The position numbers and the translations under genes were made by a program. Positions 655 to 32,119 of a DNA stretch of 64,000 nucleotides are shown one piece after another. The DNA is from Chrysemys picta bellii. Taxonomy: Eukaryota. The stretch's first letter is position 1, and every line of letters begins with the position of its first letter. The DNA is taken from assembly GCF_011386835.1 (NCBI RefSeq), contig NC_088806.1:26226001-26290000 (forward strand). The letters are read 5' to 3'. The notes below the pieces were generated by a model, which was not told where the DNA came from, searched no databases, and saw only the letters and a program-made list of their open reading frames with translations.

Positions 655-933
655 GTATCCATCAGGCTCCCCGGAGCTCCCTGCAGCAGAGATTCCAGCA
701 CCTGGGCAGCATGGGGCGAGGGGGTTCTTGGGGCAAAGGGCTATGGGTGGGGCAAAGGGCTATGGGTGGGAGTAACCCCCCCACCCCCAGACACTAGCAG
801 ATCCAGCTTCTGCTGAGTGGGACATACCAGAGAGAGCCCGGGACCCAGCCCCAAAAGGGCAAAGGGCTCTGTGCTCATCTCCTCCCATCCATCTGTCCTG
901 GCCCAGCCCCCTTTCCTTGACTCCGCCCCCCAG
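655..933 (+). other. USP2: Putative U12-type (minor spliceosome) GT-AG intron of USP2
   Basis: 5' site GTATCCAT (consensus GTATCCTT); branch TTTCCTTGAC at 912-921 with the A 13 nt before the 3' splice site. Confidence 0.75.
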
Positions 934-1041
934 ATCTGAAGCGCTTCTCCGAGGCCAGGATACGAACCAGCAAGCTCACCACCTTCATCAGCTTCCAGCT
1001 GAAGGACCTGGACCTGCGGGAGTTTGCCGCACAGAGCTGCA
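934..1041 (+). CDS. USP2: USP2 coding exon ([36 protein letters not shown])
   Basis: cag| 931-933, |gtgagt 1042; conserved LKRF motif; phase 1/1. Confidence 0.97.
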
Positions 1042-1644
1042 GTGAGTGCCCTGGGTCAAGGCGGGGGCTGGGTGCGCTGGCACAGGGAGACAACATGCCC
1101 GTAACTGACGGGACAGGGCTGGGGCAGCGTCCCTCACAGCATCCCGCTGGCCATCAGAGGCGTGTCACAGAGCACCCCTGTCGCTAACCAGCGTGCCACA
1201 CTGCCGTGCCTGTCCCTTGATCAGACACACACCCGGCCGTGACCCTTCCCCCCTGCATGGATTTATTCTTCACTTACCAAGGTCAAGAAAACGGGTTGCA
1301 GCCTGCCAGCAAAGCAGACTTCCCCATAGCCACCTCTCCTCCATCCAGGCTGCCCCTCTTCAGCCTGCACCCTTCCCCGTGCTGCAGCCACCTCGAATCG
1401 GGCTCGGGCACAGGGAGCTTGGTGGCTGATCAGTCACCCCAAGGGAGCTGCCCCCCCTAGCTGCATGTCCTTGGTTGCCCGTGCACTCATCCCACAGACA
1501 GGGCGTGGGTACGTTCTGTCCCGTCTTGCCCCAGCAGAGGCTGCACAGCATGCTCTGTGCCTTGCTGCACCCCTCTACCCCACACCCTCGAGGGAACCAG
1601 GCAGTGATGGATGAATTCCCCAGCCTCCTAGGGACAGGTCCGTA

Positions 1645-1762
1645 TCATTAGCCTTGTATTTCAGGTGGGGAAATTGAGGCACAGGGCAAGGCAGTGACAC
1701 ACACAAAGCCACATACTAAGCCAATGGCAGAACTAAGAATGGAACTGTAGAGTCCTGGCCCC
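1645..1762 (-). mobile_element. MIR/CORE-SINE-like fragment
   Basis: Reverse of the core motif gcctcagtttcccc (ggggaaattgaggcac). Confidence 0.55.
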
Positions 1763-1999
1763 CCAATCACCTGCTCACTCAAGACCGCACTCCTTCCCCA
1801 AGCTGAGAATAGAACCCAGGAGTCCTGGCTCCCTCCCAGTCTCCTGCTCAGTCCTTGGGGTCTTGCTCTTTCTACCTTGCTAGTGGGATCCCAAGGGCCC
1901 ATTACCTGCCCGGCAGGGATTCCAGCAGCAGTGGTCCGGATGGGTGCCCTGGACCCTGCCCTCGCTAATTTCTGGGTTTGCTGTGCCCCACCCCTGCAG

Positions 2000-2120
2000 A
2001 CCATGCCGTTTACAACCTGTATGCCGTCTCCAATCACTCCGGGACCACCATGGGGGGGCACTACACAGCCTACTGCAAGAGCCCCGTGTCTGGCGAATGG
2101 CACACTTTCAACGACTCCCG
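2000..2120 (+). CDS. USP2: USP2 coding exon with His box ([40 protein letters not shown])
   Basis: cag| 1997-1999, |gtaagg 2121; catalytic GGHY and FNDS motifs. Confidence 0.98.
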
Positions 2121-2249
2121 GTAAGGCTGGCACTTGGCATCCCAGGCACCCATCCCACTGCCCATGTGGCATGGGGTCTGTATCGGCGTGTGGGGAGGTG
2201 GATGGGTATTGTGGGCTGATGTGGGGGACAGCTCTGTGGATTGAGGTGC

Positions 2250-2861
2250 CTGGGGGCTGCATGGTCAATGGGTGTTCTGGGGGGAGCTCTGTAGATGGGG
2301 GGTGCCTGGGGGCTGCACAGGCTAGGAGAGTTGTGGGGGTAGCTCTGTAGATGTGGGGTGACTGGGGACTGCACGGGCTGTAGGTGTTGTGGGGGTAGCT
2401 CTGTAGATGTGGGGTGACTGGGGGCTGCACAGGCTAGGAGAGTTGTGGGGGTAGCTCTGTAGATGTGGGGTGACTGGGGACTGCACGGGCTGTAGGTGTT
2501 GTGGGGGTAGCTCTGTAGATGTGGGGTGACTGGGGGCTGCACAGGCTAGGAGAGTTGTGGGGGTAGCTATGTGGATGTAGGGTGACTAGGGGCTGCACAG
2601 GCTAGGAGAGTTGTGGGGGTAGCTCTGTAGATGTGGGGTGACTGGGGGCTGCACAGGCTAGGAGAGTTGTGGGGGTAGCTATGTGGATGTAGGGTGACTA
2701 GGGGCTGCACAGGCTAGGAGAGTTGTGGGGGTAGCTCTGTAGATGTGGGGTGACTGGGGGCTGCACAGGCTAGGAGAGTTGTGGGGGTAGCTATGTGGAT
2801 GTAGGGTGACTAGGGGCTGCATGGGCAATGAGTGCTGTGGGGGGAGATCTGTAGATTTGGG
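2250..2861. repeat. 56-bp G-rich minisatellite, left arm (~10 units), USP2 last intron
   Basis: ctgcac recurs at 2313, 2369, 2425, 2481, 2537, 2593, 2649, 2705, 2761, 2817 (period 56). Confidence 0.95.
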
Positions 2862-4287
2862 TGTGATGGATTCGGTCTCAGGGACCCCCATGGAACTGCC
2901 ACCTGATGTGCTGAGACTACCTCTGAGCCTGTTTTCCCAGCGCCCAGTGTTCAGCCTTTCTGGGCAATTTGCAACTTGTGCAGTTCTAGCTTCTTCTGAT
3001 TTTCACTCTTACTTATTTTGCTTACTTTTCTGTCCCTTTTTCCCTTGCCCGAAATAAGCAAACGGAAAATAACAAACCGGTAACCACTTGGCCTGTTCTC
3101 CAGCCAGCACACTTAAACCTCACTTAAAATCACTACCAGCATTTCAAAGCAATCATCTGTGTACAGATGCTACTCGACTACACCACTGTGATGGGTTTGG
3201 TCACAGAGACCCCCTTGGGACTGCCACTTGATGTGCTGAGACTACCTCTGAGACTATCCCTGGCAGCTTAGGACTTCAGTACCCTGTCTTGTTGAGCCAG
3301 ACACGTTGCCTGCTGCAAACACAGACCCAGGTCTGAACCACATCCCCCAAAAGCTGCAGACTTAACTGAAAACAGCTTACAAAGTGCTCCTGTCTCTAGC
3401 ACCCAGATACCCAGTTCCCAATGGGATCCAAACCCCAGATAAATCCGTTTTACTCTGTATAAAGCTTATACAGGGTAAACTCATAAATTGTCCACCCTCT
3501 ATAACACTGATAGAGAGGTATGCACAGCTGTTTGCTCCCCCAGGAATTAATGGCTTACTCTGGGTTCATTAATAAACAAAAGTGATTTTATTAAGTATAA
3601 CAGGTAGGATTTAAGTGGTTCCAAGTAATAACAGACAGGAAAGTAAGTTACCAAGCAAAATAAAGCAAAACATGCAAGTCTAAGCCTAATACAGTAAGAA
3701 ACTGATTAGAGATGAAACCTCACCCTCAGAGATGTTCCAATAAGCTTCTTTCACAGACCAATCCTTTCCCCTAACTAGGGGATTTCTCATGATTGCAGCC
3801 CCCTTTGTTGTGGTTCCACCCCCTTATATAGCTTTGGCACAAGGTGGGAATCTTTTGTCACTCTGGGTCCCCATCCCTCCTTCTAAATGGAAAAGCACCA
3901 GGTTTAAGATGGATTCCAGTACCAGGTGACATGGTCACATGTCCCATGAGACCCCAGCCTCCATTCTTCCTGGTCTGACTCACAGGGAGCCTTGCAAGTA
4001 AACAGAGCCATCTACAGTCAATTGTCCTAGTTGATGGCAGCCATCAAGATTCTAAACCACCATTAATGGCCCACACTTTGCATAACTACAATAGGACCTC
4101 ATAGTTATATTTTTATAATCCTAGTTTCAGATACAAGAATGATACATTCATACAAATAGGATGAACACACTCAGTAGATTATAAGCTTTGTAATGATACC
4201 TTACAAGAGACCTTTTCCATGAAGCATATTCCAGTTACACTATATTCACACTCATTAGCATAAAATCATATGGAGTGCAACATCACA
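2862..4287 (-). mobile_element. Internally deleted LTR retroelement: full LTR 4287-3187, PBS 3185-3175, short leader, last ~66 bp of the second LTR 2927-2862
   Basis: TGTGATG...CATCACA termini; 66-bp LTR end duplicated at 2862 and 3187 (7 mismatches); flanks TTGGG/GTGGG; minus-strand TATA ~3830 and AATAAA ~3592; TGGTGTAGTCG next to the LTR. Confidence 0.85.
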
Positions 4288-19153: not shown

Positions 19154-20067
19154 GTAGGTCCCTGGGTCTGAAACGCACCCTCCCTGCTGCCTGGCTCTTT
19201 CTCCAACTGGGTGGCAGGGTCACCCGTCTCTGAGCGGCATGTCCCAGTGCCGAGCAGACCCATGTGCACTCTCTACCAGGGTGATGCTCAGCAGTGGGTT
19301 CATCGCTGGCACGGAGCTGGGCATCCAAGGGTCTCGCCCATTGCTCTGCCTCCCCAGCTGTGGGATTGTCCGGGGGAAGGGGCCAGAGACCTTCTCAGCG
19401 AGGCTGATCACAGGGTAGTTTTGCTCTAGGAGGGGGAACAGCCTTGGGGTGTTTACCAAGGGAATGGCCTGACACCCTGTCATTTCCCTGTTGCTGCCCA
19501 GTACGTAGCTGATTGCAGTTACCAAGGGAGAACAATGGGATCGCCTCCCTAACCCCACCCCCGGGGAATCACTGGGGTAAACAGAAAGCAGCAGGGCCCA
19601 GAAATCTTAGCAGTGACCATCAGGAGAGTCCACTCCACCACCCTCCAGGTCTGCCTTTCCCCCGTTTCGTCTTTCCAAGGTACTTCCCAGGGGACCTTTG
19701 CTCCTCCTCGGTGCATTTCTCCGGTGAAGCAGTGCTGTTGTACAGGCTTGTCTGTATGGGAAGTGGTGAATTGATACCACAGTAGCTATCCTGGCATGTG
19801 GACACTCGCTATAGTCACCATATGATAGCGCTGTCCAGTTGGGTCTGTGATCCAGTAACCATGGTTATATTGTAGTTACACTGGAGTTGGGCACTGCTTC
19901 CCATTGTAATTACAGTCGCTGACTGCTCGTGTGTCCCCGGTTGGCTCTGCAAGTGCAGGGTCACCATGGCGACTATAGTTACGCCGCAGCCCATCGCATG
20001 TAGGCCCCATCGCTGTACTCAGCCAAGTACCTGCTCATTCCAACATCTTTCTCGCTCATCCGCCAAG

Positions 20068-20202
20068 AAACATGCAGCCCCTCGGAGTTCTCCTGCAGCA
20101 ACGGGGAATGTCAGGCGCGGGAGTCGGTGTGTGATGGCTGGCACGACTGCCCGGATGGGAGCGATGAATTCAACTGCACGAGTGTCTCACCCCCCTCCTT
20201 TG
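20068..20202 (+). CDS. MFRP: MFRP exon 11, LDLa2 ([36 protein letters not shown])
   Basis: AAG| acceptor 20065-20067, |gtgagt 20203; LDLa Cys pattern. Confidence 0.94.
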
Positions 20203-20522
20203 GTGAGTGAAACCCCTAGCTCAACCCAGCTCCTGCAATGACCAACACTTGGCTTATGGGGTGGGGAGATTCAATCCACCAGTTTCCCTCAGGCGGTTCA
20301 GGTCACAAGTGGAATGAGTTTGGTAGGTCTCAGCCCTGCACCCAGGGAACATCTGTCCATACACACCGACGTGACAGTACACCAACTCTGAGGCACCTGC
20401 TGGGCTGGGATCCAGATTTTGGAGCCCATGGGCTCTGCAAACGTTCTTTGCAAGGCCGAGCCAGTGCAGCCCCCCAGCTCAGATACAGCTGCCACCTGTA
20501 TCACCTGCCCTCCCCCCTGCAG

Positions 20523-20650
20523 AGTCTTCCTGCCAGCAGATCCAAGTGGAGATGTGCTTGGGCCTCAGCTACAACACCACCTCCTTCCCCAACATCTGGC
20601 TGACCATCCCAGACCAGCAGGGAGCAGCCACCATGCTCCGAGACTACAAG
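20523..20650 (+). CDS. MFRP: MFRP exon 12, Frizzled CRD start (SCQQIQVEMCLGLSYNTTSFPNIW...DYK)
   Basis: cag| 20520-20522, |gtgagc 20651. Confidence 0.97.
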
Positions 20651-20885
20651 GTGAGCCCAGCACAGGGGGCCGCGGGGGAGACTGCGCTGCCCAGCTCGGG
20701 ATTTGTCAGCTGGGTGGGAAGGAAACCCAGTGGGAAGCGAGCAGGCTGGGTGGAGAATTGGCTTTGGGTGGAAGGAGGGGGCATAGGGTATATCCAGGGG
20801 AAATGCACCCATAAATGGGGAAGCCAGCCCCCAACATCGGTGCCCCAGGCCTTGTGGTGCTCACTGCCTCCCTCTCTCCCCGCAG

Positions 20886-21110
20886 ACCCTGATGGAGCTC
20901 TCCTGCTACCAGCACCTGCGCCTGCTGATCTGCAGCCTCTTCGTGCCCAAGTGCACGCCGGACGGGGGCGTCCTGCAGCCCTGCCGCGCCGTGTGCCTGA
21001 CGGCGGAGCAGCGCTGCCAGCAGGCCCTCAGCCTCCTCAGCATCCTCTGGCCCATCAACTGCAACGTCCTCCCCGACTCCAACGACCCTGTGGAATGCTT
21101 CAAGCCGTGA
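20886..21110 (+). CDS. MFRP: MFRP exon 13, CRD end and stop; spliced CDS totals 1791 nt = 596 aa
   Basis: cag| 20883-20885, TGA 21108-21110; the CRD has all 10 Cys; the 13 exons join in one frame. Confidence 0.97.
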   Translation, partial: TLMELSCYQHLRLLICSLFVPKCTPDGGVLQPCRAVCLTAEQRCQQALSLLSILWPINCNVLPDSNDPVECFKP

Positions 21111-21285
21111 GGGGGCGGTGGGGCCCGACAAGCAGAGGGGTGCGGCTGGCTCTCCCCCGCAACCTGTCTGACTTTGGGGCGGGTGGGGACTCGAATCCTT
21201 CTCTGAGCTATGCCCTCCCCTTCCTATGCGTTTCCCTTCGGGGACCTGAGGACACAGGGAGAGCCTGTGGGGCCCAGGAGCCCCA

Positions 21286-21291
21286 AATAAA
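21286..21291 (+). terminator. Candidate MFRP poly(A) signal AATAAA (others at 21907-21912 and 22433-22438)
   Basis: AATAAA 176 nt after the MFRP stop. Confidence 0.5.
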
Positions 21292-21835
21292 GGTGCTGGA
21301 GAAGAAACCCCCCACCCTGAGTCTGAGAGCCTGCTGCCCTATAACTCCCCTTGGTATCCCCCATAACAGTCCCCTAAGGGAGCCACCAGGGGTGGCCCTA
21401 AGTGCCTGGAAGGCGACTGACTGGCTGTTGGGGTCCCCACACTGCATAGCCACAGTACTTCGGCAACGCCTGGCCCCACCTCCCCAGTCCTGCAGTGGGG
21501 CTAAAGCGTCAGCCGGCTCGTGGCTTCTTCTCACCCACCACATCCTCCGATACAGCCCGTCCGAGCAGAGGGGGAGGCGACTCTCTATTCCCCCCACCCC
21601 AGTCTACTTCCTGCAGCAAGGTGACAGCTCCCTCCCAGCTGACCCAAGAATGGTACCTGCACCTCTGACATAAGGAGCCCAGGGGCGGCCCTCTTTGTCC
21701 TAATGTCCCCAGTCCCAGCAGAGCACACACCTGGGCCTGGCTGAGCGGCCATTGCCCATCGCCCACCTCGTGCTCGGCACACGGCAAGGCCCAGCGCTGT
21801 CGAAGGGGGAAAGGCTGCTTTTGGACTGGGCATGA

Positions 21836-21990
21836 GACTCAGGAGAGCCGAGGTCAGTTCTCAGCTCTGCAATAGACTCCCTGCATGACTGGGGGGAAAA
21901 GAAAAAAATAAATCCTTCTATGACTCAGTTTCCCCATCTGAAAAATGGAAACAATACAACCAGGGGATTGTGAGGATAAAAGCATAGCTC
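21836..21990 (+). mobile_element. MIR/CORE-SINE-like fragment
   Basis: ctcagtttccccatctgaaaaatgg...gttgtgaggataaa-like core. Confidence 0.6.
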
Positions 21991-22479
21991 CATGGGGCCC
22001 TGTTGTGATGGGGGGGAGGGAGTATGGAAGTATCTAGGTAGATGAATGACAAAAAACACCTTAAGAAATGGCACCTACCCCAGCATCACGCTTCATTCCA
22101 CAGACCTTCCGGTGCCCACGCCCCTAACTTGACATCTCATCCGGGCTGCTTCCCCAATGCCACAGCAGCTTAAGACATAGCACCCATTGGCACGCTTCAG
22201 TTCCCTGGCCCAGTCCTGGCACCGGACAGCTGTCTTTCCACCTTACTCGAATGCCACTTGTGCCCAGGGTAAAGAGTTAATGATCTCACCGCGCAGACCT
22301 GTGGGTAAGGCAAGGCCCAGTGCACTGTGCTCCACTTGACTTGGCTGGCAGTGCCTGGGGAAGCCTGCACCTGGGGTGCTGGCCAGAGCAGCAGAGCGGG
22401 CTCCAAGGCCTTTGGCACGACTCTGGGTGTCTAATAAACAGCTGCGGCATTTTGCAACTACAACCTTTCAAAGAATAAT

Positions 22480-22640
22480 TTGGCCTCACACCCGCCTGGG
22501 GGGCAGGTCAATATTACCCCCATGTCAGCGCTGGGGAAATTGAGGCACAGAGAGGGGAAATTATTTGCCTGCAGGTCAGGGGCAAGGCCAGGATCAGAAC
22601 CCAGGAAGCCCATGGCTGAATCCCCAGCTCTAAGCACTGG
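22480..22640 (-). mobile_element. MIR/CORE-SINE-like fragment
   Basis: ggggaaattgaggcacagagagggg...ggatcagaacccagg. Confidence 0.6.
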
Positions 22641-22767
22641 AATATGTCTGGGCTGGATGGGATCACTGGAAGGGGTCACTGGGAACTGAGACCTAAGGGG
22701 TCCCTGGGCAAGGAGCTGGGAGTGAGAGCAGGAGCCCTCGTCTCTCTGAAGCAGACATGGCTCATAG

Positions 22768-22930
22768 CTAGGGCCCTACCAAATTCATGGTCCATTTTAG
22801 TCAATTTCCCGGTCATAGGATTTTAAAAATCATAAATGTCATGATTTCTCCAGCTATTTAAATCTGAAATTTCATGGTGTTGTAATTGTAGGGCTCTGAC
22901 CCTAAAAGGAGTTGCGGGGGGGGATCAAAA
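22768..22930. mobile_element. Truncated non-autonomous DNA transposon (hAT-like left end TAGGGCCCTACC)
   Basis: Terminus resembles recalled turtle MITE ends; no right TIR found. Confidence 0.45.
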
Positions 22931-23457
22931 GCCAAGGAGAAGATCTAGGCCCCTTTGTTATCCGAACCCCTCCCATTTCAGGGAGGGGGGGTGGGAGAGG
23001 TTCCTGGCTCTGCACTGGCCTGGGATCATCTCACCCAGAGCAGGGGGGGGGGGTATTCTCCCCCAGGTGTAAATACTGAACCCCTCCCCAAGCGGGAGAG
23101 GGCGGGAGGAACTGGGGAGAGGGTGGAAGCGGTTCCACTCCTGAGGAAGGTGGATTCTGCTCTGGAGCAGGGGAAGGGCCGTAGCTGGAGCTGCCGGCTG
23201 GGTTAGGAATCCTGGCCTGACTCCTGACCACTCCACTCAGGCTGGCTGTGCCTTAAAGCCACAAACAAGCTTCTCCTGACCAAAGACAACATCCTGTTTT
23301 CCCATCCACTGGGAGGATCCACAGGCCACTGTGGCTGGCTGAACACCACCCCTGTGATCCAGAACGCGGGCACTGCCCCCCACCTTGCCTGGGGCCTCTG
23401 CTGGGAAGGGCACAAAGGGGCTATCTCAGCATAGGCTCAGAGCAGGGCTTCCCTCCG

Positions 23458-24760
23458 CTAGTGCACAGCTCCTGGGAACCCCTGGCGCTGAGACGTGACC
23501 GTGTCCCCTCCGCTAGTGCACAGCTCCTGGGAACCCCTGGCGCTGAGACGTGACTGCGCCCTTCTCCCTGCTAGTGCACAGCTCCCAGGAACCCCTGGCA
23601 CTGAAACGTGACCATGTCCCCTTCACTAGTGCACAGCTCCCGGGAACCGCTGGCACTGAAACGTGACTGCGCCCTTCCCCCTGCTAGTGCACAACTCCTG
23701 GGAACCCCTGGCACTGAGACGTGACTGCGCCCTTTCCTCTGCTAGTGCACAGCTCCCGGGAACCCCTGGCACTGAAACGTGACCGTGTCCCCTTCGCTAG
23801 TGCACAGCTCCCGGGAACCCCTGGCACTGAAACGTGACTGCGCCCTTCCCCCTGCTAGTGCACAACTCCTGGGAACCCCTGGCACTGAGACGTGACTGCG
23901 CCCTTTCCTCTGCTAGTGCACAGCTCCCGGGAACCCCTGGCACTGAAACGTGACCGTGTCCCCTTCGCTAGTGCACAGCTCCCGGGAACCCCTGGCACTG
24001 AGACGTGACTGCGCCCTTCCCCCTGCTAGTGCACAGCTCCCGGGAACCCCTGGCACTGAAACGTGACCATGTCCCCTTCGCTAGTGCACAGCTCCTGGGA
24101 ACCCCTGGCACTGAAACGTGACCATGTCCCCTTCACTAGTGCACAGCTCCCGGGAACCCCTGGCACTGAGACGTGACTGCGCCCTTTCCTCTGCTAGTGC
24201 ACAGCTCCCGGGAACCCCTGGCACTGAAACGTGACCATGTCCCCTTTGCTAGTGCACAGCTCCCAGGAACCCCTGGCACTGAAACGTGACCATGTCCCCT
24301 TCACTAGTGCACAGCTCCCGGGAACCCCTAGCACTGAGACGTGACTGCGCCCTTCCCCATGCTAGTGCACAGCTCCCAGGAACCCCTGGCACTGAAACGT
24401 GACCGTGTCCCCTTCACTAGTGCACAGCTCCCGGGAACCCCTGGCACTGAAACGTGACCATGTCCCCTTTGCTAGTGCACAGCTCCCAGGAACCCCTGGC
24501 ACTGAAACGTGACCATGTCCCCTTCACTAGTGCACAGCTCCCGGGAACCCCTAGCACTGAGACGTGACTGCGCCCTTCCCCCTGCTAGTGCACAGCTCCC
24601 AGGAACCCCTGGCACTGAAACGTGACCGTGTGCCCTTCGCTAGTGCACAGCTTCCAGGAACCCCTGGCACGAAACATGACTACGTCCTCCTCCCTCCTCC
24701 CCATCCCACTAGTGCACAGCTCCCAGGAACCCCCGGCACTGAGATGTGACCGCGCCCCCT
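23458..24760. repeat. VNTR of ~23 units mixing 55-bp and 58-bp variants, between MFRP and C1QTNF5
   Basis: CTAGTGCACAGCTCC(C/T)(G/A)GGAACCCCTGGCACTGA(A/G)ACGTGAC core at 23 positions from 23458 to 24709. Confidence 0.98.
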
Positions 24761-25589
24761 GTGCTACATTACAGCTCACTACCTCATGCTGCCTTTGCAC
24801 ATTGCAATAACACTTTGTTGCCAAGTCTCCGGAGGAAAGAAAAGCAGCACTGCCTTTCCAAACAAGCCCAGGCCGTTTCAGAGGGAGGACGGGAGGTGGG
24901 GGCCGTAATCCAAATTCCAATTTTTGTAGTTCTAGTTTTGTTGCATACAAGTTACACATGAAAACTATTAAAATAATACGTGTGTGTGTACTTCCATTCT
25001 TTAAAAAGGTCATTCTCCCTCTTTCCATCCTCCGTGGTCTCTGTTGCCTCAGTGTGGTACATTCCCGTGTTGAACCGTTGAAGCATATCCTGGTGTGGGA
25101 CAAAAAATTGGCACATAGGATGTGTCAAGGAGCGGGCCACAAAGTTCATGAATTTGGGTGTGTTTTCTTAATTGAACAGGAGTGGGGACAGGAGGATTCT
25201 CAAATTCTGACGCTGCTCAATCACCGACACCACATTTAAACTCGAACTTTGTGTTGAAGTCACCTATTGCAAAAAAGGCCCAAGTAAGCAACCTCCAGAG
25301 GAAACAAGGCCCAAACCTCTGCAATCCGCAACTCTCAAAATATTTAAGCCGCTTTTTAGTAAAAAACAAGCCCACCAGAGTAAAACCTGCTGCACATGTC
25401 AACAGGAGGGGGAGAGAGAATTCTTCACTGTATTGCCTTTGGGGGGCAGTGGAGGAATTGTTACTGGTGTCAGGAAATCAGGCAGATGGACTGTTTCAGC
25501 CATTGTGTGTTTTCTGTACCTGGAGGGTCTGCCTCTAGCTCTGAGAGTGGCCCATTCAGTTCATAGCCTTTGGGACAATTGTCAAAAGG

Positions 25590-25800
25590 AGGCAGTGTGA
25601 CCGAGCAGTTAGAGCAGGACTCCGGACTTCAGGGGTCTACTCCCAGCTCTGCTGCAGACTGTCTGCACAAGTCACGTGACTGTCCCCTGCCTCAGTTTCC
25701 CCAATCTGTAAAAGAAGGATGCTGAGGCTGACCTGCCTCCCAGGAGGGTTGTGAGGATCAGTGTATGGCTGAAAGCACTAGAGCAGGATAGATTATCGCT
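25590..25800 (+). mobile_element. MIR/CORE-SINE-like copy carrying a perfect GTCACGTGAC at 25671-25680
   Basis: gcagtgtg..agcagttagagca...gcctcagtttcccca..ctgtaaaa...gggttgtgaggatca. Confidence 0.7.
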
Positions 25801-27239
25801 GTTGTTAATTTCTGCCAGTGGTGAGCCGGGCTTTTTGGTGATGGGGACACCTCTCCCATGGGAAGCTCCACAAACTCATTGGGCACACAGGTCTTTGCCT
25901 GGCTATCAGCCCTCTGGCTGGCTCCTTCTCCAGGGAATTCTCCTTGGCTGGAGCACCTCTCCCCCATCCCCATGCCAGGCAGAGCTGGGGCGAGAGGCTG
26001 AAATGAGTTAAATAAGAGTTTCAAAGGCCCACCTCAGGCACCGTGTCCCGTGCTCCAGCGATGGGGGAGAGACCTCCACTCACATCCGTGCTGGTGGTTT
26101 CCTCCATGGCGTTTCTGTAGCCGTCTGCAGAGCTGGCCGTGGCCTATTCCCTGGGATTGTGGGCACACACGGGTCAGCTGCACCGAGTCCTGCTGACAAC
26201 TCAGCCCCAGCTCCCAGAACTCAGCATATCTGGAGCTGGGGAGCCCAGCCCGTGGAAGCGATCAGGGACCTTGCTGGGGTCTTTGTGATGCTGCTGTCTG
26301 TCCGGCTCCAAGGAGAAACCTGCAGCGACCTGGGGAGCTGAAAGAGAGAAATGTGAGCCCAGGCCAAGTAACAGGTCGGTGTTTCACATTAGTAGGGGAG
26401 AGTGTTTGTGTGTTGTGCCAGCGAGGGTGTGACCCCTCCCCCCCCGTGCGTGTGTGCACTCCACGTTTGTGTGTTGTGCTGACGTGCGTGGCACCCGTGC
26501 TCAGCGTTAGTGGGTCTGTGCGTGTGGTCCGTGGCATTAGAGGTGTGTCCGTGGGTGGCGTTCGTGCATGCCATGTGGGCTTTGCTGCTCGCATGTGTGA
26601 CGTGGACAGTAACAATCGGCGCGCTGAGCGTGTGCCGTCCGTGGGTGTGTGGTTTAGTTCGTGTCTCATGACGCCCCAAGCAGGACCGAATTACAGGATT
26701 CCTCACGCCCTTTGCTCTTCACTCCCACCTGCCCCACCCGCAGCCTCTCCTCCTCCAAGACCTTCCACAAAACACCCGCCTGGCCCAAACACCTCACTGC
26801 TCCCCTCCAAGAGGCCAGTTTTCGGCTTGCCTCGCATTCCCCCTCCTTCCCCAGCCCTGTCACTGGGGCTCCGCTCCGTCCAGAGAAATCACCACAAAAA
26901 TGAGCCAACCCGTCTCTGGCCTGGCAGCACTCCCCACAGCACAAAGACTGGCCTGGTGCTTCCAGAATGGGGGAGCTGACACATTCATGGCTACTTACAT
27001 GATCTAGAGGATGCAAGCCACCTCCTTCACCCTCCTCTCGCTTTTCCTGTCCTTCCCTGTTCTGCCATTCCCCTCGCTGCTTTTCTTTCTCTGCCTCTTT
27101 CCCTTGGCGGCTCCGGTAGGGAGATGTGTTAAGTCAAGGAGTTTTTCTAGTCAGGTCTGTGGTTCTCTCTCCCGCCCTCCTCCCACTGGTTACAGCATTT
27201 CCGACACTGGGATATTTCCCCCCTCCTCTTGTAGCTCTT

Positions 27240-27400
27240 GGCTCTGAAAGTCACTGATTTCCTTTGGAGTTTGGGAGGAGAGACACAAGGAGGGGAAGGG
27301 GGGGCAGAGAGACAGCCTTTCCTCAGAGCTGAAGTGGCCAGGAAGAGCTCACAGGACAAGGGGACGCAAAGCAGGCGCAGCAAGAGAGCCGGGATACACA
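27240..27400 (+). other. Putative non-coding first exon of C1QTNF5 (5' end uncertain)
   Basis: Strong donor ACA|GTAAGT at 27401; ATG-free purine-rich sequence; next suitable acceptor is the C1QTNF5 coding exon at 30865. Confidence 0.4.
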
Positions 27401-27946
27401 GTAAGTAAAGCTAACCAGCTCCAGCTGCTCCGAACAAAGTTGGCGGTGTAGCTATGGGGCCAGACGGGCCATGGGATTTCCCTTAGCAACTCGGCCAGGC
27501 CCGGGAGCTCGGCTGAGTCCCAGCTCCAGTCATGACACATTCCAGCAGCAGGCTCTGTTTTTCTTCATTCCCTTTTATTTGGAGAAAGTGGCCTGCAGGA
27601 GTCCGGAAGGAGAGAGACCTGCTCCCCTTCCGCTCCCCAATGGATCCCCGCTCATCTGGGCGCTCTGAGCCAGGCTGGGGCGAGGCCTGTGTGGGGCAAT
27701 GCAGGGGAGGCCAATGCTGAAGTGAGTTGGATAGCAGCCCTGCTTGGGGGAGCGGGGGGAATGCTAGCCTTGCAGGCAGGGGGAAGGGCTGGGTTCTGGC
27801 CCCGCTGGGAAGGTGGTAATGCTGCAGAAGCCGGGAGGGTGTCCCCACACTCCACAGCCTCGCGGGGGGGCGGGGAGAGGTGCTACCCTGCCTCTGAGTG
27901 CGGTGCTGCAGCCCCTGGGTAACTCGCCCTGGAGCCGGGAAGGGTC

Positions 27947-28290
27947 CACAGGTGCCAACTTTCACATGGTAAATAAGCACCCTGACTTTCACAATAAGCC
28001 AAAAATCGAGCTAATCCCGTTTCAAAACAAGGCCAAAACAAGAACCCCAACACTCCATGTGGCTAGATCCCCCCGGCGTGAGTCTGGGACTGTGGTGGGC
28101 CCGCGGTGCACCCCTGACTCTCTCCCCTCCTTGCCCCTGCTTGCCAGGAGCCCATAAAAAAAAGAAGCAACAAGCTACAAGCCAAACAAGCTACAAACCA
28201 AAAACTAGCCAACAAGCGACTCACAAGCCAATTAAGCCAAAATCAAGCCCAATTTCTGCGTTGTTTTTTTCCGTGGGTTTGGCATGTCTG
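27947..28290. mobile_element. 344-bp non-autonomous hAT element
   Basis: 8-bp TSD GAAGGGTC at 27939-27946 and 28291-28298; imperfect CA..TGCCAA termini. Confidence 0.8.
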
Positions 28291-29283
28291 GAAGGGTCCT
28301 GGCCTCGCGCCCCGTGTGAAGGGAGAGTTAGGAGCATGGGAGTCACCGTCAGCACAGCAGGAGCCCCCTTGGGGAACGAGCACAGAGTGGAGGGTGCAGG
28401 GCAAAGGGACCCCTAGAGCAGGAGTCCAGAGGGGCTGCCAAGCAGGGTCAGTGTTAGACTCACTGGAGCCCCGACGCCCTGAGCTCTGACACCTGGGGCT
28501 GAAGTTGAAGCCTGAACAACTTAGCTTTGCGGGGCCCGCTGTGGTGTGGGGCCCCAGGCAAATTCCCTGCTTGCTGCCCCCTAACGCCGGCCCTGGTTTT
28601 ATATGCAGAAAACCAGTTGTGGCGGCACAGCTGGGCTGGGGAGCTTTTATAGCATGTTGGCGGGGGGAGGGGAGCTCAGAAAGAAAAAGGTTGAGAATCC
28701 CCTGCCCTAGAGGGCAAGAAAATAGAGACAGGATCCTTGACCACAACCCACAACCACCCACCCCACAGCCCACAACCACCCACACACCCCACACTCACAA
28801 CCCAGGACACACACAGCCCACAACCACCCACACACCCCACACTCACAACCCAGGACACACAGCCCACAACCACCCACACACCCCACAGCTCGCAATCACC
28901 CACCCACCCTCAGCTCACAACCCAGGACACAGCCCACAACCACCCACCCACCCCACAGCCCACAACCACCCACACATCCCACGCTCACAACCCAGGACAC
29001 ACACAGCCCACAACCACCCACACACCCCACGCTCACAACCCAGGACACACAGCCCACAACCACCCACACACCCCACGCTCACAACCCAGGACACACAGCC
29101 CACAACCACCCACCCACCCCACAGCCCACAACCACCCACACACCCCACGCTCACAACCCAGGACACACAGCCCACAACCACCCACACACCCCACGCTCAC
29201 AACCCAGGACACACAGCCCACAACCACCCACACACCCCACAGCCCACAACCACCCACACACCCCACGCTCACAACCCAGGACA

Positions 29284-29421
29284 TGTCTTGCATCTGAAGA
29301 AGTGAGGTTCTTACCCACGAAAGCTTATGCTCCCAGTACTTCTGTTAGTCTCAAAGGTGCCACAGGACCCTCTGTTGCTTTTTACAGATTCAGACTAACA
29401 CGGCTACCCCTCTGATACTTG
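29284..29421 (+). mobile_element. 138-bp Penelope-like element end fragment
   Basis: Abrupt composition change; recalled PLE tail (ctgttagtc..aaggtgccac...agactaacacggctacccctctgatactt); flanked by an 11-bp duplication AACCCAGGACA (29273-29283, 29422-29432). Confidence 0.85.
29290..29330 (+). ncRNA. Minimal type-I hammerhead ribozyme motif (PLE-associated)
   Basis: Stem I GCAT/ATGC; core CUGAAGA 29294-29300; stem II GUG(A)GGU-UCUU-ACCCAC; GAAA 29319-29322; palindromic AAGCUU helix III; CUU cleavage triplet after 29326. Confidence 0.8.
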
Positions 29422-30883
29422 AACCCAGGACACACAGCCCACAACCACCCACACACCCCACGCTCACAACCCAGGACACACAGCCCACAACCACCCACCC
29501 ACTCCACAGCCCACAACAACCCACACACCCCACGCTCACAACCCAGGACACACACAGCCCACAACCACCCACACACCCACAGCTCACAACCCATAACACA
29601 CACAGCCCACAACCACCCATACACCCCACACCCACCCACCCAGAGCCCACAACCACCCCCACAGCCCACAACCCAAGACACACAGCCCACAACCACCCAT
29701 ACACCCCACACCCACCCACCCAGAGCCCACAACCACCCCCACAGCCCACAATCCAAGACACACAGCCCACAACCACCCACACACAGCCCACGCTCACAAC
29801 CCATGACACAGCCCACAACCACCCACACACCACAACCCACAGCCACCCACACACCCCACAGCCACCCACACCCCACAGCTCACAACCCATGACACACACA
29901 GCTCACAGCACCCCACAGCTCACAATCCCCCAAACACCCCACACCTCACAACCCATGACACACAGCCCACAACCATGCACACACCCCACGCTCACAACCC
30001 ATGACACAAAGCCGACAACCACCCACACACCCCACACTCACAACACATGACACACAGCCCACAACCACCCACACAGCCCACAGCTCACAACCCATGACAC
30101 ACACAGCTCACAACCCCACACAGCTCACAATCCCCCACACACTCCATACCATACAACCCATGACACACAGCCCACAATTACCCACACACCCCACAGCTCA
30201 CAACCCATGACACACACAGCTTACAACCACTCACACAGCCCACGACCACTCACACACCCCACAGCTCACAACCCATGATGCCCTCCACACAGCTCACAAC
30301 CCGCGACATGCCCTCCACACGCAGCTCACAACCACCAACACACCTCACAGCTCACAACCCATAACACACAGAGCTCAGAACCACCCATGTCTCACAACCC
30401 ATGATGCCCTCCACACAGCTCACAGCCTACAACTCACCACATACACACCCCTCAATCCAGCTCACAACCAACCATGCACATACCCACCGCATAGCTCACA
30501 GCACACTATACACACAACTCACACACACACACCCTTTCCAGCCCAACACACGCACCTGGCCGATCTAGCCCATTGTCCTCCCTCCTGTTGTGCCATGGTT
30601 CTCAGATACCCTGGTGAGGGGAAGATTGGACTGGACTGACCAGGCTCGTGGCCTACCCAGGCCAGTATCCCATACCTCCTACCTTTCTGGGCCGGACCGC
30701 TGGTCCATCAAGTTCGGTGTCCAGTGTCTCTGGTACCCAACCTCAGTCGGAGCGTTGCTGTGGAATGAGGGAAACGTACAGCCCACACACCCTAATCAGA
30801 GCTGTCAAGCCAGGGCCTCCACCTCTCAGACCGCTAGAGACATAACGGTTCACTCTCCTCCCAGCCCCTCCATGGCAGCTGAG

Positions 30884-31094
30884 ATGAAGCAGCTCCTCTT
30901 CCTCTTCCTCGGGCTGATCGCCAGTTCCATCCAGATTGAGGACAACAAGATCCCGAGCCTGTGCTCTGGGCAGCCCGGAATCCCAGGCACACCCGGCATC
31001 CACGGAAGCCAGGGTCTTCCAGGCAGAGATGGACGCGACGGCCGGGACGGAGCAGCCGGGACGCAGGGAGAGAAGGGAGAGATCGGGCAACCTG
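30884..31094 (+). CDS. C1QTNF5: C1QTNF5 (CTRP5) first coding exon: signal peptide and start of the collagen repeat (in-frame upstream ATG at 30872)
   Basis: Acceptor cag| 30862-30864; [36 protein letters not shown] matches human; G|GTAAGG 31095. Confidence 0.96.
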
Positions 31095-31472
31095 GTAAGG
31101 AGACCTCTCTGCTGGAGAATGCACCAGGAACTGGAGCCCAGCTCCCAGTGAAGAAGGATCTAATGGCAGACCCGCACGGGGCCAGTTGGGTTAACCAGCC
31201 AGCCAGATAGATCCAAAGGGGCTAAGCACCTGGGTCTCCATGTTCTTCCTTCAAGGGGAAATAAATTAGATAGCATGGAGTTGATGTGAGCTGGGGAGTA
31301 GGTCCTATCTGATCTGTTTGGGATCCATGACACGCAGCCAGGGGCACAGATCCCATGGGGATGGGTGTATCACGAATTAGATCCAGAGATGGATGGGCTG
31401 GCTGGTTATTAGTGGCTCCGGTGCACTGGGCATCTCTCCTGCCCCTGTGATGTTCTCTCTCCTCCCCCTCAG

Positions 31473-31990
31473 GAGTCCCAGGTCCCCGCGGGGACAGCGG
31501 CAGCCCCGGCATGAATGGTCTGAATGGGGAGAAGGGGGTGCAGGGGGAGTGCGCGGTGGCTCCCCGCTCAGCCTTCACCGCCAAGCGCTCGGAGTCGCGC
31601 AGCCCGCCCCTGGCGGACCAGCCCATCCGCTTTGACGTGGTGCTGATCAACGAACAGGGCCACTATGACGCGGACACGGGCAAGTTCACCTGCGAGATCC
31701 CCGGCGTCTACTACTTTGCCGTCCACGCCACCGTGTACCGTGCCAGCCTGCAGTTTGACATCATGAAGAACGGCCATTCGGTGGCCTCCTTCTTCCAGTT
31801 CTACGGCAACTGGCCCAAGCCCACCTCGCTGTCGGGCGGTGCCCTGGTGCGCCTGGAGCCTGAGGACGAAGTGTGGGTTCAAGTCGGGGTGGGTGACTAC
31901 ATCGGCTTCTACTCCAGCATCAAGACAGACAGCACCTTCACCGGCTTCCTGGTGTACACCTACTGGCAGAACTCCGCCGTCTTCGCCTGA
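31473..31990 (+). CDS. C1QTNF5: C1QTNF5 last coding exon: collagen end and gC1q domain
   Basis: ag| 31471-31472; [54 protein letters not shown]; TGA 31988-31990. Confidence 0.98.
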
Positions 31991-32119
31991 GACCCGAGCT
32001 GCCGGGGGCGGGGGGAGCGACCGAGGAGTGCCGTCCCCTCGGCGCACAGCCCAAACCCCGTCACGTCCCCTGGGGAGGGACCCCCAAGAGGCATCCGGGT
32101 CCAGTGGCCTAAGCATGGT

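What the first reader, a model, noticed from the sequence alone, without database searches (positions are those of the whole stretch)
29290..29330. Intact-core hammerhead ribozyme, sense-oriented, in the putative C1QTNF5 intron / MFRP read-through path
Seen: GCAT-CUGAAGA-A-GUGAGGUUCUUACCCAC-GAAA-GC-UU-AUGC. All core nucleotides and the G10.1-C11.1 pair are present, stem I is 4 bp, helix III is the palindrome AAGCUU, and the predicted cut is after 29326. It lies in a 138-bp insert with an 11-bp target duplication. Known: Penelope-like retroelements carry minimal type-I hammerheads that cleave mainly as dimers through a palindromic helix III (Cervera and de la Pena 2014; Lunse et al. 2017). Inference: the host pre-mRNA could be cut when it pairs with another same-family transcript. 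That would make a trans-acting, concentration-dependent switch on CTRP5 pre-mRNA or on MFRP read-through. The CUU triplet and the single copy may make it slow.
Basis: partly seen in the sequence, partly recalled or inferred. Interest (0 to 1): 0.75.

Follow-up and report, generated by a model that had tools for sequence, protein, structure and literature searches.

The report
Solo Penelope-type minimal hammerhead relic
The motif is a real minimal hammerhead-ribozyme sequence, but it sits in one 5'-truncated copy of a retrotransposon tail present some 20,000 times in this genome, a kind described in 2014, and nothing here suggests it cuts the neighbouring gene's RNA.

Summary
At 29290-29330 (+) lie GCAU / CUGAAGA / unpaired A / a 6-bp helix II with a bulged A / GAA / AGCU / U17 / AUGC. 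They sit in a 138-bp insert (29284-29421) flanked by an 11-bp duplication, inside a C/A-rich minisatellite. A full minimal-hammerhead descriptor hits once in the window and never in 300 shuffles. Genome contigs of three related organisms lay 20,000-25,000 pieces on exactly 29285-29422. The 3' end is fixed, and other copies continue further 5'. So this is a 5'-truncated solo copy of a very abundant retroelement tail, with the ribozyme on the element's sense strand. Every sequence feature matches the Penelope-like minimal hammerheads of Cervera and de la Pena 2014, which mention turtles. This scan holds 140 notes on such motifs in the same genome.

The proposed trans-acting switch is not supported. 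There is no second copy in 64 kb. The double-hammerhead dimer is predicted to be unfavourable (+3.7 kcal/mol). Published single motifs do not cleave, and tandem ones cleave poorly. Transcription of this site is not shown. MFRP ends 8.2 kb upstream with three AATAAA signals soon after its stop. The C1QTNF5 start codon lies 1.5 kb downstream, and no upstream exon was shown. The finding is ordinary and of low interest.

The parts
28754..30361 (.). C/A-rich (on +) minisatellite with a basic unit of about 46 bp; this is the target into which the element inserted
   Evidence: Tandem Repeats Finder; GC skew -0.46 over 28001-30000
29273..29283 (.). Left copy of the 11-bp target-site duplication, AACCCAGGACA
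   Evidence: the minisatellite register resumes only after the right copy
29284..29421 (+). 138-bp insert: 5'-truncated tail of a very high-copy Penelope-type (or retrozyme-type) retroelement, sense strand on +
   Evidence: 20,289, 20,601 and 25,515 contig pieces per genome run lie on 29285-29422 only. Loose ends behind 29419-29422 are random flanks, so the 3' end is fixed. Loose ends before 29289 share ...TTTCACTCCA, so other copies continue further 5'.
29284..29288 (+). Five junction bases (TGTCT) not shared with the family. With T29289 they read TGTCTT, a 5/6 inverted copy of the adjacent target AGGACA.
29290..29293 (+). Hammerhead stem I, 5' strand (GCAU)
29294..29300 (+). Core box C3 U4 G5 A6 A7 G8 A9
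29301..29301 (+). Unpaired A between A9 and G10.1, typical of PLE minimal hammerheads
   Evidence: feature listed in PMC4209133
29302..29318 (+). Helix II: 6 bp with bulged A29305 and loop UCUU, closed by G10.1 (29302) and C11.1 (29318)
   Evidence: MFE fold
29319..29321 (+). Core G12 A13 A14. C29318-G29319 is a CpG that is mutated in roughly a quarter of the family by depth.
   Evidence: table 3: 29318 C>T at 14-18%, 29319 G>A at 10-12.5%
29322..29325 (+). A15.1 G15.2 C16.2 U16.1: the palindrome AGCU. It cannot close as a monomer and forms helix III only with a second copy.
   Evidence: dimer model in PMC4209133
29326..29326 (+). U17; the predicted scissile bond is 3' of this base
   Evidence: position in the motif; cleavage not tested
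29327..29330 (+). Stem I, 3' strand (AUGC)
29331..29421 (+). Remainder of the element tail down to its fixed 3' end. Contains a 3' splice-site-like tract, CTCTGTTGCTTTTTACAG.
29422..29432 (.). Right copy of the target-site duplication, AACCCAGGACA
20787..21110 (+). Last MFRP-like coding exon (Fz domain) with its stop codon at 21108-21110; context only
   Evidence: Pfam Fz, E 6.5e-15; stop-to-stop ORF
30872..31094 (+). C1QTNF5-like first coding exon (signal peptide plus collagen repeats). ATG at 30872, donor GT at 31095, acceptor-like CTCTCCTCCCAG ending at 30864. Context only.
31511..31990 (+). C1QTNF5-like C1q-domain coding region; the exon starts somewhat upstream of the ORF start. Context only.
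   Evidence: Pfam C1q, E 1.4e-37; translation

Best explanation
The insert is one solo, 5'-truncated copy of the 3' tail of a very abundant Penelope-type retroelement, either an autonomous PLE pseudo-LTR or its non-autonomous retrozyme-like derivative. It was copied from the RNA's fixed 3' end by target-primed reverse transcription into a C/A-rich minisatellite, leaving an 11-bp duplication. The tail carries the family's minimal type-I hammerhead. In the element's own life cycle that motif is thought to process multimeric or tandem element transcripts. There, two adjacent copies swap strands to build a shared AGCU helix III, forming a double hammerhead. At this locus the motif still looks intact but has no partner. 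It lacks helix III and any loop-loop contacts. It is most likely an inert passenger with no ribozyme effect on C1QTNF5 or MFRP RNA. Shown here: the motif, the insert boundaries, the TSD, the copy number, the fixed 3' end with 5' truncation, CpG decay of the core in other copies, and the gene orientation. Inferred: PLE ancestry, dimer-dependent cleavage in the element's life cycle, and inertness at this site.
For: The motif is present and non-random. About 20-25 thousand contig pieces per genome lie on exactly 29285-29422. Flanks after 29419-29422 are random, and a shared family sequence continues before 29289. Head-to-tail joints with linkers of about 23-28 nt (29409-29421 back to 29287-29291) exist elsewhere in these genomes (table 5c). 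So tandem partners occur for some copies but not for this one. All published sequence features of PLE minimal hammerheads are met: helix I of 4-5 bp, a long helix II, a base between 9 and 10.1, G10.1-C11.1, and palindromic 15.2-16.2. Turtles are named in that paper (PMC4209133). PLEs are typically 5'-truncated, carry the hammerhead in the pLTR and show a microsatellite insertion bias (PMC8557442). The only variants above 10% inside the ribozyme across the family are CpG transitions that destroy C11.1 or G12, so inserted copies are not kept functional. No second copy lies in the window. The dimer is predicted to be unfavourable. Single motifs are inactive in vitro.
Against: No full-length copy with an RT/GIY-YIG ORF was available, so the link to Penelope-like elements rests on motif architecture, insertion anatomy and literature. 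No Rfam hammerhead model matches. Cleavage was not and cannot be tested here. The secondary-structure energy model ignores hammerhead tertiary contacts, proteins and local crowding. This copy keeps an intact core, including the mutable CpG, and is near-identical to much of the family: about 30% of the laid pieces are at least 99% alike. Residual activity therefore cannot be excluded.
Confidence: 0.85

Rival explanations
1. One reading: the host pre-mRNA (a C1QTNF5 intron or MFRP read-through) is cut at 29326/29327 when its hammerhead half pairs through AAGCUU with another same-family transcript. This would give a concentration-dependent switch on CTRP5 or MFRP expression.
For: The core is intact and lies on the same strand as both genes. 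Family transcripts exist in an RNA library: 380 contig pieces in X15. PLE hammerheads are reported to act as dimers. Retrozyme-type sequences are somewhat depleted from introns in Xenopus, so a cost of genic copies is conceivable.
Against: Transcription of the site is not shown: X15 has no depth on the flanks. Three AATAAA signals lie within 1.4 kb after the MFRP stop, and no upstream C1QTNF5 exon was found. The double-hammerhead dimer is +3.7 kcal/mol relative to two monomers. Its helix III is only 4 bp and stem I only 4 bp. Even cis dimers cleave poorly in vitro, and mostly at non-physiological Mg2+. From my own knowledge, a CUU triplet is a poor cleavage site. With about 20,000 copies per genome, an efficient trans reaction would hit very many transcripts.
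Confidence: 0.03
2. The insertion matters to the host through ordinary transposon effects rather than catalysis. One route would be the sense-oriented 3' splice-site-like tract CTCTGTTGCTTTTTACAG in the tail acting as a cryptic acceptor. Another would be disruption of the minisatellite upstream of C1QTNF5.
For: The tract is visible and is oriented with the gene. The insert lies 1.45 kb upstream of the C1QTNF5 ATG, within a strongly strand-asymmetric repeat.
Against: There is no RNA evidence for any exon or junction here. Whether the site is intronic or upstream of the promoter is unknown. Most such insertions are neutral.
Confidence: 0.07
3. The motif is a chance look-alike and not a hammerhead at all.
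For: Rfam's hammerhead models give no hit even at E<=10. The fold is not unusually stable, z = -0.7. The bare core boxes are expected 0.29 times per window.
Against: The full descriptor gave 0 hits in 300 shuffles. The motif is part of the consensus of a family of about 20,000 copies. It carries features that were not searched for: the extra base after A9, G10.1-C11.1 and palindromic 15.2/16.2. These are exactly the ones listed for PLE minimal hammerheads.
Confidence: 0.02

Closest known systems
Minimal hammerhead ribozymes of Penelope-like elements (Cervera and de la Pena 2014, PMC4209133; Lunse, Weinberg and Breaker 2017, cited in PMC6765202)
   Same: Type-I topology. Stem I is 4 bp with no defined loop 1. 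Helix II is long, 6 bp with a bulge. There is an unpaired base between A9 and G10.1, a G10.1-C11.1 pair, no helix III in the monomer, and a palindromic 15.2/16.2 pair. The motif is massively repeated and mostly occurs as solo copies from truncated elements. Turtles are named as carriers.
   Different: Nothing substantive was found. The link of this family to an RT/GIY-YIG ORF was not checked here, and the cleavage triplet is CUU.
Animal non-LTR retrozymes (Cervera and de la Pena 2020, PMC7229834; Li, Clavereau and Pollet 2026 preprint, 10.64898/2026.07.22.740005)
   Same: Short non-coding units carrying type-I hammerheads and related to PLE pseudo-LTRs. Reptile consensus units average 176 bp. 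Monomer copies are dispersed, many in introns. Head-to-tail joints of this family exist in these genomes.
   Different: This locus holds a single unit, not a tandem array. No circular RNA evidence exists. The fixed 3' end with variable 5' end looks like target-primed reverse transcription of a linear RNA.
[quoted passage not shown]
   Same: A sense-oriented type-I hammerhead that may lie within a host gene's transcription unit.
   Different: From my own knowledge, those have a stable helix III and loop 1-loop 2 contacts, act as monomers, and are conserved at orthologous positions. Here helix III and the loops are absent, no Rfam model matches, and the sequence is one copy of a repeat family.
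Double-hammerhead satellite and viroid ribozymes (newt satellite 2, ASBVd; Forster et al. 1988, cited in PMC6765202 and PMC4209133)
   Same: An unstable helix III, so that activity needs two copies forming a shared helix III.
   Different: Those partners are supplied in cis by tandem or multimeric transcripts. This copy has no partner within 64 kb.

Membership tests
Hammerhead ribozyme (catalytic core) | Conserved boxes C3-U4-G5-A6-N7-G8-A9 and G12-A13-A14 | tested here: met
   CUGAAGA at 29294-29300 and GAA at 29319-29321
Hammerhead ribozyme (catalytic core) | A15.1-U16.1 pair followed by H17 (not G) at the cleavage site | tested here: inconclusive
   A29322 and U29325 are present and U29326 is H17. 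But only G and C lie between them, so the pair cannot close in a monomer. It is possible only in a two-copy double hammerhead.
Hammerhead ribozyme (catalytic core) | Three helices around the core | tested here: inconclusive
   Helix I is 4 bp and helix II is 6 bp plus a bulge. Helix III is absent in the monomer. In a dimer it would be 4 bp of AGCU/AGCU, with a predicted +3.7 kcal/mol relative to two monomers.
Hammerhead ribozyme (catalytic core) | Match to a curated Rfam hammerhead covariance model | tested here: not met
   No hit at gathering score or at E<=10 on 29200-29480. By my recollection these models expect a helix III; the library's content was not inspected.
Hammerhead ribozyme (catalytic core) | Site-specific self-cleavage giving 2',3'-cyclic phosphate and 5'-OH ends | not testable with these tools
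   All runs laid were assembled contigs, which cannot show RNA ends.
PLE minimal hammerhead (Cervera and de la Pena 2014) | Short helix I (4-5 bp) and long helix II (6-8 bp) | tested here: met
   4 bp, and 6 bp with one bulge; criteria from PMC4209133
PLE minimal hammerhead (Cervera and de la Pena 2014) | [quoted passage not shown] | tested here: met
   A29301; G29302-C29318; criteria
PLE minimal hammerhead (Cervera and de la Pena 2014) | Palindromic positions 15.2-16.2 that allow a dimeric helix III | tested here: met
   G29323-C29324 within AGCU
PLE minimal hammerhead (Cervera and de la Pena 2014) | Large consensus families of copies in the same genome, mostly solo and truncated | tested here: met
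   20,289, 20,601 and 25,515 contig pieces in three genome runs lie on the insert
PLE minimal hammerhead (Cervera and de la Pena 2014) | Compensatory changes in helices I and II across family members | tested here: inconclusive
   At the 10% threshold, only the CpG sites 29318 and 29319 vary within the motif. A subfamily with helix II GUGGG...CCCAC is seen in loose ends, but linked changes cannot be read from this output.
PLE minimal hammerhead (Cervera and de la Pena 2014) | Located in the pseudo-LTR of an element encoding a telomerase-like RT and a GIY-YIG endonuclease | not tested
   There is no full-length copy in the window, and no eukaryotic genome collection could be searched. Scans of metagenome and prokaryote contigs found nothing. 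Only indirect support exists: 5' truncation, TSD, fixed 3' end and head-to-tail joints (PMC8557442).
Non-LTR retrozyme | Tandem array of hammerhead-bearing units at the locus | tested here: not met
   There is a single unit here. Head-to-tail joints occur at other loci (table 5c).
Host-gene regulatory ribozyme (in the sense of the intronic HH9/HH10 or CPEB3 ribozymes) | Transcribed in sense as part of the host transcript | tested here: inconclusive
   It is on the same strand as MFRP and C1QTNF5. But the RNA contigs laid give no depth on the unique flanks. AATAAA signals follow the MFRP stop, and no upstream C1QTNF5 exon was shown.
Host-gene regulatory ribozyme (in the sense of the intronic HH9/HH10 or CPEB3 ribozymes) | Self-sufficient active fold as a single copy | tested here: not met
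   No helix III is possible in the monomer, and stem I is 4 bp without a loop. Single minimal motifs are inactive in vitro.

The most novel reading that the evidence does not exclude
Solo Penelope-type half-hammerheads embedded in host pre-mRNAs are cut in vivo after pairing with a second RNA. The partner could be abundant family transcripts. At this locus it could also be a second transcript of the same locus. That pairing would use the 14-nt G-U-tolerant palindrome 29277-29290, created by the target duplication plus the inverted junction bases. The palindrome abuts stem I and is predicted to homodimerise at -14.8 kcal/mol in a 101-nt context. That would make thousands of retroelement relics a dose-dependent RNA-cleavage network, with C1QTNF5 as one target.
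Probability: 0.02. Interest if true: 0.75.

Novelty: already known. Interest (0 to 1): 0.1.

Why it matters
It matters little as it stands. The result is a clean annotation: one more dead-end copy of a retroelement tail whose minimal hammerhead was described in 2014. It warns against reading function into intact-looking ribozyme cores in repeats. C1QTNF5 and MFRP are retinal-disease genes in humans, and a genome-wide ribozyme network would be new biology. The evidence here points the other way.

Tried and rejected
- **Rfam scans.** At gathering score on the whole window and at E<=10 on 29200-29480, no hammerhead model hit. The only match was a chance Six3os1 alignment (E 3.3), which I rejected.
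- **Exact-pattern scans.** Searches for the tail and for a degenerate hammerhead pattern found nothing in metagenome contigs or in prokaryotic genome contigs. This is unsurprising for an animal repeat.
- **Literature string search.** Searching for pieces of the motif returned only unrelated primer coincidences.
- **Papers not available.** Lunse et al. 2017 is not held, and the supplement of Cervera 2014 is not held. I could not compare this family with their published turtle sequences.
- **Empty-site test.** Read laying joints that skip 147-151 bases (29280/29282 to 29430-29432) looked at first like empty-site alleles. I rejected them, because the flanks are minisatellite units and any other unit junction gives the same joint. 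Presence of the insert at the orthologous site in organisms B, C and D therefore remains unknown.
- **Reads over the gene region.** I did not lay reads on the wider region, because 28754-30361 is a long tandem repeat and the tool says it turns such stretches away. The exon structure upstream of 30864 was therefore not resolved.
- **Earlier scan notes.** Searches by sequence and for a full-length Penelope RT gave nothing.
- **Conservation contrast.** Variants above 10% number 2 of 41 positions inside the ribozyme and 8 of 91 outside. I did not test this difference and read no constraint from so few sites.

Full report
**Observation**

The window reads GCAT CTGAAGA A GTGAGGTTCTTACCCAC GAA AGCT T ATGC at 29290-29330 on the + strand (coordinates rechecked).

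In hammerhead numbering the parts are:

| Part | Coordinates | Sequence / pairing |
|---|---|---|
| Stem I | 29290-29293 with 29327-29330 | 4 bp |
| C3-A9 | 29294-29300 | CUGAAGA |
| Extra base | 29301 | unpaired A |
| Helix II | 29302-29318 | G-C, U-A, G-C, bulged A29305, G-C, G-C, U-A, loop UCUU |
| G12 A13 A14 | 29319-29321 | GAA |
| A15.1 G15.2 C16.2 U16.1 | 29322-29325 | AGCU |
| U17 | 29326 | predicted cut after this base |

The minimum-free-energy fold reproduces stem I and helix II. It is not unusually stable (-10.8 kcal/mol, z = -0.7).

The insert runs from 29284 to 29421 (138 bp). AACCCAGGACA occurs at 29273-29283 and again at 29422-29432. The surrounding 46-bp minisatellite (28754-30361) resumes its register only after the second copy. 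This is what a target-site duplication predicts.

**Is it more than chance?**

The two core boxes alone are expected 0.29 times per window. I then scanned with a full minimal-hammerhead descriptor. It requires stem I of at least 4 bp, an optional base after A9, G10.1...C11.1 closing at least 4 bp, GAAA, complementary 15.2/16.2, U, and H. It finds this site only, and nothing in 300 dinucleotide-preserving shuffles of the window on both strands.

Rfam has no match at gathering score or at E<=10. A monomer of this motif has no helix III, and by my recollection the curated hammerhead models expect one. I read the blank as uninformative rather than as evidence against the motif.

**What the insert is**

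I laid the assembled contigs of three genome runs from close relatives and one RNA run on 29250-29455 at 80% likeness. The runs came from the search and hold 52-70% of the stretch's sampled words.

- Each genome run placed 20,289-25,515 contig pieces on the stretch, and about 30% of them were at least 99% alike.
- Depth rises from almost nothing to millions between 29285 and 29291 and falls back between 29418 and 29424. The repeat's homology therefore coincides with the insert.
- Sequences that run on behind 29419, 29420 and 29422 have no consensus (agreement 0.36), so they are unrelated flanks. This is the element's true 3' end.
- Sequences that run on before 29289 share ...TTTCACTCCA in all four runs. 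Other copies therefore continue further 5', and this copy is 5'-truncated one base before stem I.
- A fixed 3' end with a variable 5' end is the signature of target-primed reverse transcription. It makes the window's + strand the element's sense strand, so the hammerhead is sense in the element.
- A few contigs join 29409-29421 back to 29287-29291 through linkers of about 23-28 nt (table 5c). Head-to-tail units of roughly 165 bp therefore exist elsewhere in these genomes.
- There is no second copy in this window, in either orientation (blastn with word size 7).

**Decay of the ribozyme in the family**

Inside the 41-nt motif, only two differences reach 10% of the family's depth. These are 29318 C>T (14-18%) and 29319 G>A (10-12.5%). 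They are the two transitions of the CpG formed by C11.1 and G12 (table 3).

Roughly a quarter of the family, by depth, has therefore lost an essential core base through ordinary CpG decay. Inserted copies are not being kept functional. The copy in this window still has the CpG.

**Comparison with what is known**

Cervera and de la Pena 2014 (PMC4209133) defined minimal hammerheads in the pseudo-LTRs of Penelope-like elements. Their features are:

- helix II of 6-8 bp
- an unpaired base between A9 and G10.1
- a conserved G10.1-C11.1 pair
- palindromic 15.2-16.2
- little or no helix III
- thousands of mostly solo copies from truncated elements

They state that similar motifs are conserved in turtles and snakes. 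Every sequence feature on this list is met here.

Craig et al. 2021 (PMC8557442) describe PLE insertions as heavily 5'-truncated. They are often tandem or inverted, carry the hammerhead in the pLTR, and show a microsatellite insertion bias in some clades. A 2026 preprint relates animal non-LTR retrozymes to PLE pLTRs. It gives a mean reptile unit of 176 bp, finds no PLEs in birds or mammals, and reports that 44% of retrozyme sequences in Xenopus tropicalis overlap introns.

I could not test one feature: linkage of this family to an RT/GIY-YIG ORF. No full-length copy was within reach. I therefore file the insert as a Penelope-type or retrozyme-type tail on architecture and insertion anatomy, not on the ORF.

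This scan already holds 140 notes on hammerhead and Penelope motifs in the same genome. One follow-up reached the same classification.

**Gene context**

- MFRP-like exons (CUB, LDLa, CUB, LDLa, Fz) lie on the + strand. They end with a stop at 21108-21110.
- AATAAA occurs at 21286, 21907 and 22433.
- The C1QTNF5-like first coding exon starts with ATG at 30872 and ends at 31094 before a GTAAG donor. The C1q domain lies in the ORF 31511-31990.
- The hammerhead is thus 8.2 kb past the MFRP stop and 1.5 kb before the C1QTNF5 ATG, in the same orientation as both genes.
- An acceptor-like CTCTCCTCCCAG ends at 30864, so an upstream non-coding exon is possible. None was shown.
- No CpG island marks a promoter.
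- The RNA run laid has no depth on the unique flanks. The RNA runs found hold only 6-9% of the words of 29255-32000.

Whether the site is intronic, promoter-proximal or intergenic remains open. I did not lay reads on the wider region, because it contains a 1.6-kb tandem repeat, which the tool says it turns away.

**The proposed trans switch**

In a double hammerhead each molecule supplies the enzyme strand for the other's cleavage site. The inter-strand pairs here would be two 4-bp stems I and a 4-bp AGCU/AGCU helix III.

- Evaluated with nearest-neighbour energies, this structure is -15.9 kcal/mol against 2 x -9.8 for the monomer ensembles. That is +3.7 kcal/mol at 1 M standard state.
- The best unconstrained dimers of the 41-nt and 57-nt RNAs have predicted Kd values of about 20 mM and 0.3 mM.
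- The model omits tertiary contacts and proteins. Even so, it puts a bimolecular reaction many orders of magnitude above the picomolar-to-nanomolar level I would expect for a single pre-mRNA (my own estimate).
- Experimentally, single minimal motifs gave no detectable cleavage. Dimeric or trimeric constructs cleaved weakly, mostly at non-physiological Mg2+ (summarised in PMC6765202).
- From my own knowledge, CUU is a poor cleavage triplet, and minimal hammerheads without loop-loop contacts need high Mg2+.

I therefore rate the switch at about 3%.

**Verdict**

The motif is real, and the insert and duplication are real. The classification as a Penelope-type minimal hammerhead is well supported. 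The functional inference is not supported. This is an ordinary solo relic of a known kind.

Noticed in passing
window 29277-29290: The five or six bases at the 5' junction of the insert (TGTCTT) are a 5/6 inverted copy of the adjacent target AGGACA. Together they make a 14-nt G-U-tolerant palindrome, CAGGACAUGUCUUG, abutting stem I. This may be a trace of template switching or fold-back at second-strand synthesis, as in the inverted PLE arrangements described in the literature. ViennaRNA predicts a strong homodimer (-14.8 kcal/mol) for the 101-nt context.
   Followed up: partly
window 28754-30361: A 1.6-kb minisatellite with a unit of about 46 bp lies just upstream of the C1QTNF5 coding exon. 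It is C/A-rich on the + strand (GC skew -0.46) and G/T-rich with GGG runs on the - strand.
   Followed up: no
window 29383-29417: In RNA run X15, summed contig depth over the last 40 or so bases of the element is 40,000-68,000, against about 900-4,000 over the rest. Nearly all of that depth carries 29390 T>C. One or a few highly expressed RNAs in that sample carry just the extreme tail, or another repeat shares it.
   Followed up: no
window 29370-29387: The element tail contains a 3' splice-site-like tract, CTCTGTTGCTTTTTACAG, followed by GACTAAC. It is in sense orientation relative to C1QTNF5 and could act as a cryptic acceptor if the site is intronic.
   Followed up: no
window 21108-30871: The MFRP stop and the C1QTNF5 ATG are 9.8 kb apart, with AATAAA at 21286, 21907 and 22433. 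By my recollection the two genes are described as dicistronic in mammals, so the pair looks uncoupled here.
   Followed up: partly
family copies elsewhere, seen via window 29289/29326 joints table 5c: Contigs in X3 and X12 join 29326 to 29289 through CAGA. This reads as the perfect palindrome CTTCAGATGCATCTGAAG, a head-to-head fold-back of two copies meeting at the start of the ribozyme. Another fold-back joint, 29383/29418, is shared by all three genome runs.
   Followed up: no
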